Shown here: positions 39,950-60,838 of the stretch, piece by piece
Position numbering within the stretch: the first letter of the stretch is position 1
Layout of the letters: each line of letters begins with the position of its first letter
The notes under the pieces: generated by a model
Databases searched by the model: none
What the model was told of the DNA's origin: nothing
The model's input: the letters and a program-made list of their open reading frames with translations, nothing else
Position numbers and translations under genes: made by a program
Assembly: GCF_000315625.1 (NCBI RefSeq)
Contig: NW_005434668.1
Location: forward strand, 66,852-130,851
Direction: 5' to 3'
Source: Guillardia theta CCMP2712
Taxonomy: Eukaryota > Protista > Cryptophyta
DNA: 64,000 bases

Positions 39950-41410
39950 CTAGCAATTCTTTCGATGAAGTCAGAACGTCAAACCGAAAGTTGTAGATCT
40001 GAGCTTCTTGCAGAGGATCCAAACCATCGTTACTCTTGACGGTCAGTGAAGCACCTAGGTTGAGCAGGCTGAAGACCTAACATCAGTGCTACCACAGCAG
40101 TCCAGGACGTCTCACCATGCGCATGCCTCTGTTCTCCCTTCCATGGCCGCATAATGCAATGGAGTTCGACCAACGCTGTTGACGCAGTTGATCTCTGCTC
40201 CCAGATTGATCAACAGCTTCACGGCTTCAACCTTTGAGGTTAAGATTCAAACTTCAGCTCATATCAGAAAGAGAGAGGAAATGTCATACTCGTCCTTCTA
40301 ATGCAGCAAAGTGCAAAGGCGTGTCTCCAAACCATGCAGAGTCTCGAGTACTGATGTCCGCACCCTCATGAGCCAGGGTCTCGATCCGAGAGCAATCGCC
40401 CTCTATGGCCGGTCAGACGAGCTATGGGCTCTTTAAGACGCATCAACCTGCTGCTGCTGCCAGCAGCTGGAAGGACAGCATGTCAAGAGGTTTATGACAT
40501 GATTCTGAGATATTCTTGGAAGCCTAATGAAAATGCAGATCGCTCAGAACGCGGCCACTTAAGCATATCACTCACCCAGTCGTGGAGGGAAACTGGCAAG
40601 GAGTGGTCATGGTGCTTTTTGACAGTTCCGGGGAGCTTTGGAGGGCATGAATCAGACTTTTGTACAAGCCAATGAGAATTGTAATGTACGGCTTCTCTCA
40701 ACAATGTCACCCGCAAAGTTGCAATCCCCGTTGGGTCACTCTCATCTAATACAAGCATGAAACAAGTCAGCAAGACTTCTCATTAATGTTATGTCTGTTT
40801 GTCACTTGTATGTTTTGCCTCACTAGAGCGTTTAATCTCCAATTCTACCGGGGATCCAACATCACCCGTTATTCGCTGTCACCAACGTCAGTCGTACCAA
40901 CAAGATTTTAAGCTCCTGCGAGCTGGGGCACGTTTGCAATATTCTGCAGATACTCATCCTTGTTTGGAAGGTCTCTGCAGGAAGGTAATCTCCACCCATC
41001 AACGGCTAGCAACACATCCCCCTCCTACAGGTCAAGTTGCCGATCAGTTCCAAGGCGACACTTTACGTAGGCTTCACCATGATTTGCCCGCTCCTTTGGG
41101 CAGCGCATCCCTCCACCAAATGACTGAAGATCACCTGCGCTGCATTTTGAGTTCTCATAACATATGCTAGAATTCTTCCTACCTCATTGGCAGACGAGAT
41201 TGAAAGGCTAGCGCCAATACCAGCCTTTGTCCTTTCTGCAACCGTGTTGTTGGCTTCATGTACACTGGCGGAGCCTCCCCGCAATCGAAGGTGATTGTGG
41301 CACTCAAGGAGAGAGATTGAGATGTATGTAGTTGGTGCTAACAATACAGCTTCGAGCCCTGAGAACAAGAGGAATGAAGCTGCGAGCTTGAACCCAAGTA
41401 GTCGACCCAT
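39950..41410 (-). CDS. Ankyrin-repeat protein with signal peptide and LRLRGG-ended leader
   Basis: MGRLLGFKLAASFLLFSGLEAVLL...NHLRLRGG. C-terminal exons give GADISTRDSAWFGDTPLHFAALEGR-VEAVKLLINLGAEINCVNSVGRTPLHYAAMEG. Middle exons and 3' end uncertain. Confidence 0.6.
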
Positions 41411-41765
41411 CCAGCTCACCTCCAAGTACCCACAGAGATGAGATGAAGCTGACTGATCTCACACAGAGGGACAATTTCTGTTGACATGACGGCTATATGC
41501 TATCAGCAGGGAGGAGCGTAGGCGCATGGAGCCACGGGCGCATGCCGTTCCTCTCCTTCATCGCACCACCCTACTGAGCCCGAGCATGGCTGATGGCAGA
41601 GACGCATCTTACTAGTGCTGTATGAGGGATATCATCTTACTGGGGTGCGAGCACGATGCTTTGTTTTGCTGTCTTCTTTGATTTTCTATATGCCTACCTG
41701 AGGCAGACTTGATGGAAATATATTGACAAATAAACTCCCGTACCGCACGTGAAAAAGCAGCGAAA

Positions 41766-58400: not shown

Positions 58401-60838
58401 TCTGCTCTGCTCTGCTCTGCTCTGCTCTGCTCTGCTCTGCTCTGCTCTGCTCTGCTCTGCTCTCTTTTTGTACCTGCAGAGCAGAGATGACGGAGAGAAC
58501 TGGAGGGAGGGCGGCAGGCCCAAGTCTGTGAGCTGCAGAGAATGAGGTAAGAAGTGCAAGAAAACTAACATGACGATGAACATGCAGTGAAGCAGCACCA
58601 CGAGTACAAGTTTGAGAAAGTATGAGTACAAAAAAACAAGTATGAGTATGACGACGACGACGACGACGACGATGATGATAATGAACAGGAATTCATGGAA
58701 GGAGGAGAAGATACGGACCAGCAACTGAGAGGGCTTGAGCTGCTGTTTCCCTTACGGGGGAGATCAGAAAGTCTCCACTGTAATCGCTAAACCTGGACGA
58801 GAAACCTTCACAAGCTGCGCAATATGATCGAATCATTGCAATCGCAATGAGATCAACATTCACTCTTCAACCATACTGCTGTCTCACAGACATGACTCGT
58901 CACAACTTTGCTCGTCCCACCTGTCAAGAGCGAGGACTCTGAGGAGCTGAACGACGCACTCGATGACGAAACTCCTTCTGATGACGTCATCGTCCTCCTT
59001 CTTGGCGATGGTCTTGTTTGTAGAGCACGGATGGTACTTGAGGACGTGTTTCAGGACAAGAGCAGCTCCGTGCCTGCAACCTCGTCCGTTATCTCCTACC
59101 AGGAGCTCTCGCACTTGGCCATTGCCTGACTTCCCAGGCAGGGTGAAGGAGGTTGTCTCTGCCATACTGCAAACTCCCTCAATCGCGCAAAAATGATGCA
59201 ACACCTGTCTCCCTCCCTCTCCCTTCTTCTCCCTCTCTCCCTCCCTCTCCCTCCCTCTCTCCCCCCCCCCCTCTCTCTCTCCCTCTCCCTCTGCCTCCCT
59301 CTCCCACTCGTTTTCCCCCTCCCTCTTCCTCCTTCCCCATCTCTCTCTGACCTTACAGACATCGCTCAAGACCCAACTCAAGTCTTTCTCCTCGCCTTCT
59401 CCCTGACCGCCGTATTGCACAATCATTTCCTCCCCGAGCTCTCGCTCGGTGCTATCACGTTGGTCCTTCTCCTTTTCCGCCTCCAATCTTCCTTTGACGC
59501 TCTTTCTTCCCTTGACGTTGTTACTGGGAGTCTACCCAGCGTCAAACTCTCGTTTCGTTGCAAGACTCAACCTTACCGCGTCTACGATTGAGTTGGCAGG
59601 CTGGGCAAACAGCAACGAAGAATCTTGTACACGAATCGAAGTAAGCAAAGGATTAGAGCAACAGCACAAACCTTTGATCTCTTCAAGAATCTCCAGCCTC
59701 TTCAGCGGTTCAAACATCAACGTGTCATCATGTGATGAAGGAGAGTACGCTCTTGCGTCCCCTGCTGTGGCCCCGGCTGCAGCGGCATCCAGGCTCTCCT
59801 CCTCTACCTCCGCTGCAATCAGTTCCATAGTCTTGCAAGCAGCAGCTCGCGTGTCCCAGTCCCTTGAGCCGCAGAGGACCATAACACGTTGAACGATCTT
59901 CATTCTCACTTCTCTGTAGTTGAGAACATGATAAGCTTGCAAGCACATGTCAGCGAACATCACCTGTGAGCTTTGAAAAGGCCAGCAATTTGTTCAGCAG
60001 CTGCCTGCACCACATGTCAAGTTTTCGCGCGATAGGACATGGCTCGGTTGACTTGCCAGTCTGCTTCGAAGGTCACTGCCAGAAGCAAGAAGCACAAGGG
60101 TTCTTTCAAATCTTGTACTCTTCATTTCCTCTTTCTTCTTCTGGTTCTCTTGCTTGGACGGCTTGGCTGTGGTTGCTGTCTCCAATGATTTCTTCTGCTG
60201 CATTGAGCCTCGCACAGGTTTTGTTCTTTGCTTCTTTGTTGGACGAATCGCCGCCAAGAAGGTTTCAACATCGGTTTCTTTCCTGAGCATGTCTTAACAC
60301 AGCTCATTTTGATCTTCATTGAAGCTCACATGCCCAGCTCTTTGAGATCAGGCGCTGTCAGCGACTCCAGATTTCGAGGCTTTATCCCCTCCTTTTCCTT
60401 CAAGGAGGGAAACATTACAAAACATCGCAATAATAGCAAGCGATACTTACGAAAACTTCAACGTATCTTTCCAAACCGATGGAACTGCAAATCGTGATTC
60501 AGAAACAGGGCTCGAGATTTACAGAGCAGGCATGATAGCGATGCGTTGCGTTACCTCAGCGCTGATGCAAGGGAGGCACTTTGTTGACCTCCTCGTAGCC
60601 TCACAATGTTTCTGTGATTTTGCTGAACTAGCCATTCCCGAATTTTTCTTGGCGATCCCCTTTCTAACAAGACAATCCTGTTGGACGCAGCATCTCCAGC
60701 CAGCAGCAGTGGATCCTGTGTCTTTCTTGACATCCATACTCTCGACCAAGCTCCTCCTGCTCCTCCTCCACCACTTCCTCCTGCTCCTTCCCATGGCAGC
60801 AGCGCCATGACCAGGACTATCAGCAGTCGCATCGCCAT
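52443..60838 (-). CDS. BTAF1: MOT1/BTAF1 SNF2 ATPase with N-terminal signal peptide, VRLRGG motif and SAM domain
   Basis: [20 protein letters not shown]...[10 protein letters not shown] (Mot1 N-terminus), [17 protein letters not shown] region, [68 protein letters not shown]-terminal [10 protein letters not shown]. Upstream exons splice in frame to a leader starting at 60838. Confidence 0.9.
55727..55896 (+). repeat. (GAT)n microsatellite in BTAF1 intron
   Basis: Direct reading. Confidence 0.95.
58290..58463 (+). repeat. (CTCTG)n microsatellite (~34 units) in BTAF1 intron
   Basis: Direct reading. Confidence 0.95.

What the first reader, a model, noticed from the sequence alone, without database searches (positions are those of the whole stretch)
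41273..60604. Shared ubiquitin-tail mimic (L/V)RLRGG ending the leaders of two unrelated signal-peptide proteins
Seen: the ankyrin protein (LRLRGG, 41273-41290) and BTAF1 (VRLRGG, 60587-60604) both have a signal peptide followed by RLRGG; in BTAF1 a folded domain starts a few residues later. The two 'A-F' stroma-type leaders in the window (7538, 45446) lack it. Established: LRLRGG is the C-terminus of ubiquitin, cleaved after GG by deubiquitinases, and import across the second plastid membrane (SELMA) is ERAD/ubiquitin-derived. Inference: a leader-processing system in which a DUB-like protease acts as the periplastid transit peptidase, or the exposed GG end is conjugated. I cannot verify how far this has been described before.
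Basis: partly seen in the sequence, partly recalled or inferred. Interest (0 to 1): 0.82.

Follow-up and report, generated by a model that had tools for sequence, protein, structure and literature searches.

The report
Ubiquitin-tail motif ending two import leaders
Two unrelated genes of a red-plastid alga encode proteins whose signal-peptide-type N-terminal leaders end in the last five residues of ubiquitin (RLRGG); this could mark where leaders are cut off during import into the compartment around the plastid, but this window alone does not exclude chance.

Summary
Both hexapeptides are real. They lie on the minus strand, in frame, in the first exons of an ankyrin gene (LRLRGG, residues 41-46) and a SAM-like + Mot1/BTAF1 gene (VRLRGG, residues 79-84). 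Each follows a hydrophobic signal-peptide-like N-terminus with no aromatic residue at the likely cleavage site. In the Mot1 gene a hand-built GT-AG model with three short introns puts RLRGG two to three residues before a SAM-like domain. The identity is at protein level only: codons differ and the flanks are unrelated. There is no ubiquitin fold, and none of 150 Mot1 relatives has LRGG near its N-terminus. Statistics cut both ways. RLRGG in both leaders is expected about 1e-6 times. But any shared pentamer among the window's six signal-peptide N-termini has P about 0.15, and a meaningless one (SLLIQ) also occurs. No orthologues were reachable. Probable RNA contigs stop about 20-40 nt short of the Mot1 gene's first ATG. 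No paper links LRGG to periplastid import. First readers of this scan noted the same motif on many other pieces of this genome (at least 19 notes); none has been followed up and I could not test them. Verdict: plausible new leader-end processing motif, mechanism unproven.

The parts
41075..41410 (-). Ankyrin gene, exon 1 (ATG 41410; exon end approximate, donor GTGAAG or GTAAAG near 41075-41066)
   Evidence: Open frame from the first ATG and best codon score of the six frames. No Pfam family in this exon.
41348..41410 (-). Ankyrin gene: signal-peptide-like N-terminus, residues 1-21 (MGR + hydrophobic run ... SGLEA)
   Evidence: Hydropathy 1.0-2.0 over the first ~30 residues. By heuristic only. 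Hydrophobicity continues to about residue 35, so a signal anchor is not excluded.
41273..41290 (-). LRLRGG, residues 41-46 of the ankyrin protein (codons CTT CGA TTG CGG GGA GGC)
40287..40412 (-). Ankyrin-repeat exon of the same gene
   Evidence: Pfam Ank/Ank_4, E 5e-4 to 9e-4
40115..40246 (-). Ankyrin-repeat exon of the same gene
   Evidence: Pfam Ank_4 1.6e-10, Ank 1.9e-8
60555..60838 (-). SAM-like/Mot1 gene, exon 1 (ATG 60838, A at -3 and G at +4; donor AG|GTAACG)
60779..60838 (-). SAM-like/Mot1 gene: signal-peptide-like N-terminus, residues 1-20 (MAMR + [12 protein letters not shown] + EGAG)
   Evidence: Hydropathy 2.5-2.8. An in-frame spurious signal peptide at this spot is expected about 0.4% of the time (my estimate from the hit density). 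Transcription of this part is not shown.
60587..60604 (-). VRLRGG, residues 79-84 (codons GTG AGG CTA CGA GGA GGT)
   Evidence: The GTGAGG here looks like a splice donor but is out of phase with the only acceptor that continues the SAM-like frame (reasoned; one search tests only the adopted model).
60282..60484 (-). Exons 2 (60484-60451), 3 (60397-60330) and the start of exon 4 (from 60282). With the end of exon 1 they encode a SAM-like domain (residues about 87-143).
   Evidence: GT-AG introns of 70, 53 and 47 nt, frame kept, no stop. SAM called by inspection only; the pieces are too short for Pfam or PDB searches.
59997..60282 (-). Exon 4 ORF: Lys/Gln-rich linker, then the canonical Mot1 N-terminus ([15 protein letters not shown], residues about 183-197). 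Same reading frame as the last SAM-like helix.
   Evidence: A profile of 43 Mot1 N-termini scores it above all 2000 shuffles.
53285..55528 (-). Mot1/BTAF1 motor exon (HEAT + SNF2 + Helicase_C)
   Evidence: Pfam SNF2-rel_dom 6e-67, Helicase_C 8e-17, HEAT. Best relatives are Mot1/BTAF1-length proteins at 45-57% identity.
7538..7640 (+). Control: stroma-type leader (…PLTSA|F…) without LRGG
45446..46018 (+). Control: thioredoxin-fold protein with a stroma-type leader (…VSAGA|F…) without LRGG
   Evidence: The exact product is on a JGI contig, Pfam Thioredoxin.
24173..24190 (+). Third VRLRGG of the six-frame scan. Antisense to the 1009-aa fn3 ORF 23018-26047 (minus strand), so non-coding noise.

Best explanation
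RLRGG, preceded by Leu or Val, is a selected element at the C-terminal end of non-phenylalanine bipartite leaders. These leaders consist of a signal peptide plus a transit-peptide-like stretch. They take nucleus-encoded, nucleo-cytosolic-type proteins across the ER and the periplastid membrane into the periplastid compartment or nucleomorph of this red-plastid alga, which is probably a cryptophyte.

The most likely role is a maturation site. After SELMA-type (ERAD/ubiquitin-derived) translocation, a papain-like protease that reads the ubiquitin tail cuts after Gly-Gly. This would be a DUB/ULP-type enzyme, which the compartment needs anyway to process ubiquitin precursors. The cut releases the mature protein: SAM-like domain + Mot1 in one case, the ankyrin protein in the other. 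It would also remove any ubiquitin attached to the leader.

Shown: the motif, its frame, its position after signal-peptide-like N-termini and just before the first domain, and its absence from the two A|F leaders. Inferred: the targeting destination, the cleavage and the enzyme class.
For: - The exact ubiquitin tail is present in both leaders, in frame.
- RLRGG in both N-termini is expected 1.3e-6 times from their composition. Six-frame [LV]RLRGG is seen 3 times against 0.08 expected.
- Codons differ at 4 of the 5 shared residues and there is no flanking DNA or protein similarity, so the sharing is at protein level.
- In the Mot1 gene the motif ends 2-3 residues before a SAM-like domain in a frame-consistent GT-AG model.
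- That leader has 11 K/R against 4 D/E, which is transit-peptide-like.
- The cargo is nuclear-type: SNF2/HEAT Mot1 and ankyrin.
- None of 150 Mot1 relatives has LRGG in its first 250 residues, and among the 40 best hits I saw no signal peptide, so this is a lineage-specific N-terminal extension.
- The two secretory-type signal-peptide proteins (1752, 2448) and the two A|F leaders lack the motif.
- The literature leaves room. Periplastid leaders are known only by the missing +1 Phe (PMC12136025). No PtDUP homologue is known in cryptophytes, and how imported proteins escape the periplastid proteasome is open (PMC5756292).
- Untested leads: first readers noted signal peptide ... (R)LRGG on many other genes of this genome.
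Against: - There are only two instances that I could check.
- As a post-hoc test, any shared pentamer among six signal-peptide N-termini has P 0.15, and a decoy (SLLIQ) occurs.
- No orthologue or transcript-derived protein could be retrieved to test conservation.
- Probable RNA contigs cover only 0.57 of 60700-60870 and seem to end short of the first ATG of the Mot1 gene.
- The ankyrin leader between signal peptide and motif is short (about 25 residues), hydrophobic, nearly uncharged and has no lysine.
- Most DUBs need the ubiquitin fold, which is absent.
- Cleavage after GG would leave N-terminal Gln on the Mot1 protein. Gln is a destabilising residue in the cytosolic Arg/N-degron pathway (established knowledge).
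- The single-sequence AlphaFold model puts RLRG at the end of a helix in a moderately confident segment.
Confidence: 0.4

Rival explanations
1. Coincidence. Two Leu/Arg/Gly-rich N-terminal regions share a pentamer by chance, and it was noticed because it equals the ubiquitin tail. This includes the sub-case that the Mot1 mRNA starts downstream of ATG 60838. The protein would then begin at Met36, have no signal peptide, and be an ordinary nuclear SAM-Mot1.
For: P(any shared 5-mer among the six N-termini) is 0.15, and a second, meaningless shared pentamer (SLLIQ) exists. A third VRLRGG is plain antisense noise. Probable RNA contigs X6 and X7 both hold only 0.57 of 60700-60870, which fits contig ends near 60800-60820. 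Codon-usage scoring does not single out the reading frame of Mot1 exon 1.
Against: The specific motif is expected 1.3e-6 times in both. Both copies sit at the same kind of place: after a signal-peptide-like start and before the first domain. The sixth residue is conservative (L/V), with shared N at -8 and SAS shortly after. A strongly hydrophobic, in-frame signal-peptide-like start with a good Kozak context directly upstream of Met36 is itself unlikely by chance; I estimate about 0.4% from the density of such hits. Transcript assemblies commonly miss 5' ends. Untested leads of many more instances exist.
Confidence: 0.3
2. The motif is real but is not a DUB-type cleavage site. It could be a sorting or retention signal read by a periplastid receptor or a Cdc48 cofactor. 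It could instead be a site for a different peptidase, for example a basic-site convertase cutting after RLR, or an M16-type processing peptidase.
For: There is no ubiquitin fold for a classical DUB to grip. The basic R-L-R core resembles sites of basic-residue proteases and the positive patches of transit peptides. Other motifs downstream of a signal peptide (PEXEL, TEXEL, RxLR) are cut by aspartic or other proteases (established knowledge).
Against: All five residues, including Gly-Gly, are identical in the two proteins and to ubiquitin. A basic-site protease would not constrain GG. The PEXEL, TEXEL and RxLR patterns are not met by the sequence.
Confidence: 0.2
3. Common descent. The two leaders derive from one mobile or duplicated leader cassette (exon shuffling), and RLRGG is what is left of it.
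For: First-reader leads mention a second SAM protein with the same leader type. The Mot1 leader contains a weak Mot1-N-terminus-like stretch ([14 protein letters not shown]), reached by only 0.95% of shuffles. This hints that leaders here can arise by local duplication.
Against: There is no DNA similarity beyond 7-14 nt chance matches, and no protein similarity beyond the motif and a few neighbours. Codons differ at 4 of 5 residues. Distances from the N-terminus differ (41 against 79).
Confidence: 0.04

Closest known systems
Bipartite periplastid-compartment targeting presequence (signal peptide + transit-peptide-like region without +1 Phe) used with SELMA in cryptophytes and diatoms
   Same: Signal-peptide-like start, a following stretch without an aromatic residue at the likely +1 position, nucleo-cytosolic-type cargo, and a contrast with A|F stroma leaders in the same window.
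   Different: Known transit-peptide-like regions are described as having no consensus beyond charge and the missing Phe (PMC3017844; PMC12136025). A fixed RLRGG at their end has not been reported in the papers searched.
Ubiquitin / ISG15 C-terminal tail (LRLRGG) and ubiquitin-fusion precursors processed by deubiquitinases
   Same: The hexapeptide is identical in the ankyrin protein and five of six residues match in the Mot1 protein. It lies directly upstream of the part that would be released, as in Ub-L40 and Ub-S27a fusions.
   Different: No beta-grasp domain precedes it. There are only about 25 residues in one case, no Pfam hit and no fold match. It sits behind a signal peptide.
ptDUP, the periplastid deubiquitinase of diatoms (Hempel et al. 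2010, as cited in PMC5756292)
   Same: A ubiquitin-tail-specific protease located in the compartment where the proposed cut would occur.
   Different: Its known role is removing ubiquitin from translocated preproteins, not cutting leaders. No homologue has been reported in cryptophytes. No enzyme gene is in this window.
PEXEL (RxLxE/Q/D), TEXEL (RRLxx) and oomycete RxLR motifs
   Same: A short Arg/Leu motif some tens of residues behind a signal peptide that marks proteolytic maturation and onward trafficking.
   Different: The pattern is not met (R-L-R-G-G). Those are cut by aspartic proteases in the ER or Golgi and serve export to a host cell.
Double-glycine leader peptides cut by C39 papain-like peptidase domains of ABC exporters
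   Same: A leader ending in Gly-Gly with a hydrophobic residue at -4, removed by a papain-fold cysteine protease.
   Different: These are bacterial, have no signal peptide, and the other consensus positions (-7, -8, -12) do not fit consistently.
Coronavirus papain-like protease sites (LxGG)
   Same: A protease with DUB activity that also cuts a bare LxGG in an unfolded polypeptide. This shows that a ubiquitin body is not always needed.
   Different: Viral polyprotein context; no relation by descent is implied.

Membership tests
Ubiquitin / ubiquitin-like modifier | C-terminal tail sequence L-R-L-R-G-G | tested here: met
   LRLRGG (41290-41273) and VRLRGG (60604-60587)
Ubiquitin / ubiquitin-like modifier | Beta-grasp domain of about 70 residues directly before the tail | tested here: not met
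   Only about 25 residues lie between the signal peptide and the motif in the ankyrin protein. No Pfam family in either exon 1. The AlphaFold model of Mot1 exon 1 has three strands plus a helix and no significant PDB match (best E 0.5, monellin).
Periplastid-type bipartite leader (signal peptide + transit-peptide-like region) | N-terminal ER signal peptide | tested here: inconclusive
   Hydrophobic N-termini with a basic n-region, but no dedicated predictor was available. The ankyrin one may be a signal anchor. RNA contigs do not reach the first ATG of the Mot1 gene.
Periplastid-type bipartite leader (signal peptide + transit-peptide-like region) | No aromatic residue at +1 after the signal peptide; following region not acidic | tested here: met
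   Likely +1 residues are Val (ankyrin) and Gly (Mot1). Leader charge is +11/-4 (Mot1) and +2/-1 (ankyrin). Cleavage sites are estimated by eye.
Periplastid-type bipartite leader (signal peptide + transit-peptide-like region) | Localisation of the protein in the periplastid compartment or nucleomorph | not testable with these tools
   Needs GFP fusions or immunolocalisation.
Stroma-type bipartite leader (ASAFAP-like) | Phe (or Tyr/Trp/Leu) at +1 of the transit peptide | tested here: not met
   Not in the two RLRGG proteins. Present in the controls at 7538 (TSA|F) and 45446 (AGA|F).
PEXEL / TEXEL / RxLR host-targeting motifs | RxLxE/Q/D, RRLxx or RxLR pattern behind a signal peptide | tested here: not met
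   The sequences HLRLRGGS and IVRLRGGQ fit none of the three patterns.
Double-glycine (C39) leader peptide | GG at -2/-1 with conserved hydrophobic -4, -7, -12 and Glu -8; no signal peptide | tested here: not met
   GG and Leu -4 are present. Positions -7, -8 and -12 do not fit in both proteins, and a signal-peptide-like start is present.
Mot1 / BTAF1 | N-terminal HEAT repeats plus C-terminal SNF2 ATPase and Helicase_C | tested here: met
   Pfam SNF2-rel_dom 6e-67, Helicase_C 8e-17, HEAT 6e-5. Relatives of 1700-2100 aa at 45-51% identity. Canonical N-terminal motif recognised.
SAM domain (first domain after VRLRGG) | Match to a SAM profile over about 65 residues | tested here: inconclusive
   The domain is split over four exons. 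Single-exon pieces gave no Pfam or PDB hit. The spliced sequence resembles the SAM consensus by eye only.

The most novel reading that the evidence does not exclude
RLRGG is the genome-wide end-mark of leaders that send host-encoded nuclear and cytosolic proteins into the periplastid compartment or nucleomorph. A ubiquitin-tail-specific cysteine protease acts as the long-sought periplastid transit peptidase. It clips off the leader together with the ubiquitin attached during SELMA passage. That would explain how imported proteins escape the periplastid proteasome, and it would give a sequence rule for predicting the periplastid proteome.
Probability: 0.3. Interest if true: 0.85.

Novelty: new variant of a known kind. 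Interest (0 to 1): 0.62.

Why it matters
Periplastid and nucleomorph proteins can today be predicted only by a negative feature: a signal peptide plus a leader without +1 Phe. Recall is poor, about 25% in ASAFind 2 (PMC12136025). It is not known how or whether their leaders are removed. It is also not known how ubiquitinated imports avoid the periplastid proteasome in cryptophytes (PMC5756292).

A fixed ubiquitin-tail motif at the leader/mature junction would address all three. It would give a positive sequence marker. It would link the ubiquitin-dependent translocon mechanistically to maturation. It would make both questions directly testable by N-terminomics, GG-to-AA reporters and protease assays.

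It would also mark a Mot1 TBP remodeller as a candidate host-encoded regulator of nucleomorph transcription.

Tried and rejected
- Orthologue conservation.
  - The representative search with the SNF2 exon gave no close full-length relative. The best hit is 57% identical and sits on a 2.5-kb metagenome scaffold.
  - Word searches with exon 1 of either gene found nothing. Their length window of 0.55-1.75x excludes the full proteins.
  - Two metagenome scans found nothing.
  - ESM Atlas had no usable hit.
- Look-ups of exact ORF products. These failed for 23021-26047 and 565-1752. The thioredoxin-fold gene was found on a JGI contig collinear with the window.
- DNA repeat or shared cassette: rejected.
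- Alternative splicing that would remove VRLRGG through the GTGAGG formed by its first two codons: rejected, because it is out of phase with the acceptor that continues the SAM-like frame (reasoned).
- Other LRGG hits in six frames (6220, 13251, 28968, 30101, 51751, 55568): short ORFs, antisense or internal, with no leader context.
- Ubiquitin-like fold of the Mot1 leader: no support.
- SAM confirmation from single exons: no hit.
- Codon-usage scoring: too weak to decide the frame of Mot1 exon 1.
- Literature: no paper joins LRGG or RLRGG with periplastid, nucleomorph, SELMA, transit peptide or Guillardia. Gould et al. 2006 is not held.
- One word-index protein search was left unused. No stop-free reference long enough to reach the full-length proteins exists.

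
Full report
**What is in the sequence**

The reverse complement of 41273-41290 is CTT CGA TTG CGG GGA GGC (L-R-L-R-G-G). That of 60587-60604 is GTG AGG CTA CGA GGA GGT (V-R-L-R-G-G). Both are on the minus strand, in the reading frame that opens at the first ATG of a gene.

**Gene A**

- Gene A starts at ATG 41410. It begins MGR, followed by a hydrophobic run of about 30 residues.
- LRLRGG is residues 41-46.
- About 30 low-complexity residues follow, then ankyrin-like sequence.
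- Two downstream exons (40412-40287 and 40246-40115) hit Pfam ankyrin families, with Ank_4 at 1.6e-10.
- I could not fix the middle exons. The protein is about 280-300 residues by my estimate.

**Gene B**

- Gene B starts at ATG 60838, with A at -3 and G at +4. It begins MAMR + [12 protein letters not shown].
- A Gly-rich stretch and a basic stretch follow (residues 21-84: 11 K/R against 4 D/E).
- VRLRGG is residues 79-84.

**Gene model of B**

| Part | Coordinates | Splice signal |
|---|---|---|
| Exon 1 | 60838-60555 | donor AG\|GTAACG, phase 2 |
| Intron 1 | 70 nt | |
| Exon 2 | 60484-60451 | donor GTAAGT |
| Intron 2 | 53 nt | |
| Exon 3 | 60397-60330 | donor GTGAGC |
| Intron 3 | 47 nt | |
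| Exon 4 | from 60282 | |

All introns are GT-AG, the frame is kept and there is no stop.

The spliced product reads, right after GG, a stretch of about 60 residues that looks like a SAM domain (…[12 protein letters not shown]…[11 protein letters not shown]…). Exon 4 then runs in one ORF through a Lys/Gln-rich linker into the canonical Mot1 N-terminus ([15 protein letters not shown]). A profile of 43 Mot1 N-termini scores that motif above all 2000 shuffles. The large exon 55528-53285 carries HEAT, SNF2 (6e-67) and Helicase_C.

The SAM call rests on inspection.

The first two codons of VRLRGG (GTGAGG) mimic a splice donor. That donor is in phase 0, whereas the only acceptor that continues the SAM-like frame needs phase 2, so I reject it.

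**Controls inside the window**

- The second belongs to a thioredoxin-fold protein. Its exact product is on a public JGI contig that is 100% collinear with the window.
- Two further proteins with clean signal peptides (1752 minus strand, 2448 plus strand) go straight into acidic or Pro-rich mature parts and also lack the motif.
- A third VRLRGG in the six-frame scan (24176, plus strand) is antisense to a 1009-aa fn3 gene and is noise.
- Other LRGG hits have no leader context.

**Is it more than chance?**

For the specific motif the answer is clearly yes.
- Six-frame [LV]RLRGG is found 3 times against 0.08 expected. None of 200 second-order Markov simulations reached 2.
- The expected joint occurrence of RLRGG in the two N-termini, given their composition, is 1.3e-6.

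The motif was picked after seeing it, however.
- The chance that any two of the six signal-peptide-type N-termini of this window share some pentamer is 0.15. For this particular pair it is 0.023.
- The same set does contain a second, meaningless shared pentamer, SLLIQ.

The window alone therefore makes chance unlikely only to the extent that the ubiquitin tail is accepted as a prior hypothesis.

Three further points speak for selection at protein level.
- Codons differ at four of the five shared residues, and there is no flanking DNA or protein similarity.
- The neighbours are alike (N at -8, Leu/Val at -6, SAS shortly after).
- The position is equivalent in both proteins: behind a signal-peptide-like start and before the first domain.

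**What it is not**

- It is not a ubiquitin-like domain. Gene A has only about 25 residues between the signal peptide and the motif. Neither exon 1 has a Pfam hit. The single-sequence AlphaFold model of B exon 1 (three strands and a helix ending in RLRG, pLDDT about 80 for residues 30-80) has no significant PDB match and no beta-grasp order. The model of A is of low confidence.
- It is not a Mot1 family feature. None of the 150 best Mot1 relatives has LRGG in its first 250 residues, and I saw no signal peptide among the N-termini of the 40 best hits.
- It does not fit the PEXEL, TEXEL or RxLR patterns. It fits the double-glycine leader consensus only at GG and -4.

**Weak points**

2. Two probable RNA assemblies (X6, X7) hold 0.51 and 0.44 of the words of 59900-60900. 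That fits a spliced mRNA with my exons. They hold only 0.57 of 60700-60870. If the missing words are at the 5' side, the contigs end near 60800-60820, short of ATG 60838.
   - This may be ordinary 5' truncation of assemblies. DNA-type runs also miss words here.
   - It leaves open that translation starts at Met36, without a signal peptide.
   - Against that reading, an in-frame, strongly hydrophobic signal-peptide-like start at exactly this spot is expected by chance only about 0.4% of the time, by my estimate from the density of such hits.
3. No orthologue could be reached, so conservation is untested.
4. The leader of A is short, hydrophobic, almost uncharged and lacks lysine. Cleavage after GG in B would expose Gln.

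**Context from the scan's own notes (leads, not evidence)**

First readers of other pieces of this same genome recorded 'signal peptide ... (R)LRGG' many times: 12 notes contain RLRGG and 19 contain LRGG. The proteins named are TCTP, eL22, an LSm protein, AspRS, an importin-7/8-like protein, MePCE, a PP2C fusion, thioredoxin reductase, an Rpn13-like protein and a SAM+FKBP protein. Several notes place the motif at the leader/mature junction. None has been followed up, and I had no access to those sequences.

If they hold, chance is excluded and the cargo list (translation, RNA, nuclear transport, transcription) points to a second eukaryotic cytoplasm and nucleus.

A periplastid-predicted third AspRS is on record for the cryptophyte Guillardia theta (PMC4494062). 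That fits this list if the organism is that alga or a relative. The organism is my inference from A|F leaders, gene density and G+C content; it is not shown.

**Literature**

- No paper in the library joins LRGG or RLRGG with periplastid, nucleomorph, SELMA, transit peptide or Guillardia.
- The current predictor for periplastid proteins uses only the absence of +1 Phe and has low recall (PMC12136025).
- Transit-peptide-like regions are described as governed by charge, not by sequence (PMC3017844).
- A review states that cryptophytes have periplastid 26S proteasomes but no PtDUP homologue. It asks how imports avoid digestion (PMC5756292).

**Most likely mechanism (inferred)**

1. Co-translational ER entry through the signal peptide.
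2. SELMA passage of the non-Phe leader, with ubiquitin attached to it.
3. A cut after Gly-Gly by a ubiquitin-tail-reading papain-like protease in the periplastid compartment. Such an activity must exist there to mature ubiquitin precursors.

The cut releases the mature protein and discards the leader plus ubiquitin.

I put 0.4 on 'functional leader-end processing motif'. I put about 0.3 on chance, which includes a mis-called start in B. I put 0.2 on a real motif with another reader or another protease, and a few percent on a shared cassette.

**Novelty**

If real, this is a new variant of a known kind: a bipartite periplastid leader with a fixed, ubiquitin-derived end-mark.

Noticed in passing
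window 60838-59997 (minus strand): The Mot1/BTAF1 gene carries a lineage-specific N-terminal extension of about 180 residues: signal-peptide-like start, basic leader, SAM-like domain, Lys/Gln-rich linker. The canonical Mot1 N-terminus begins with its own Met (residue 182), so an internal start could give an ordinary nuclear form from the same gene.
   Followed up: partly
window 60676-60635 (minus strand), residues 55-68 of gene B: The leader contains a stretch ([14 protein letters not shown]) that weakly resembles the conserved Mot1 N-terminal motif. It scores 3.3 bits against a profile of 43 Mot1 N-termini, reached by 0.95% of shuffles. This may be a remnant of a duplicated first exon.
   Followed up: partly
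window 58290-58463: A perfect (CTCTG)n microsatellite of 34.8 copies lies inside the Mot1 gene, probably in an intron. In one frame it reads as an AEQSR repeat.
   Followed up: partly
The region is Gly/Glu/Arg-rich low-complexity sequence inside the Mot1 gene.
   Followed up: no
window 7538 (plus strand) and 1752 (minus strand): These two unrelated signal-peptide N-termini share the pentamer SLLIQ. It is a useful decoy showing how easily pentamers are shared among six leaders.
   Followed up: yes
window 23018-26047 (minus strand): A 1009-aa single ORF in a 62% G+C island encodes a protein with fibronectin type III domains (fn3 9e-28). Its antisense strand carries a spurious VRLRGG.
   Followed up: partly
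window 2448-3461 (plus strand): A signal-peptide protein with a long poly-Pro tract is interrupted by a run of N (an assembly gap) in the window.
   Followed up: no
window 17485-22812 (plus strand): A row of five long same-strand ORFs, one with a Mediator Med12 domain (4e-9), is probably one large Med12-like gene.
   Followed up: no
window 38200-38900 (minus strand): CTP synthase-like exons (…[17 protein letters not shown]…) lie directly downstream of the ankyrin gene. They were recognised by eye only.
   Followed up: no
L002 = window 44876-46670: A JGI contig (sample 3300017164) is 100% identical and collinear over 1795 nt around the thioredoxin-fold gene. Sequence of the same strain is therefore in the public protein and contig collection.
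   Followed up: partly
one search run table (window 59900-60900): Several freshwater and lake metagenome runs hold 4-26% of the 31-mers of this stretch. That suggests the organism or a very close relative occurs in lakes.
   Followed up: no
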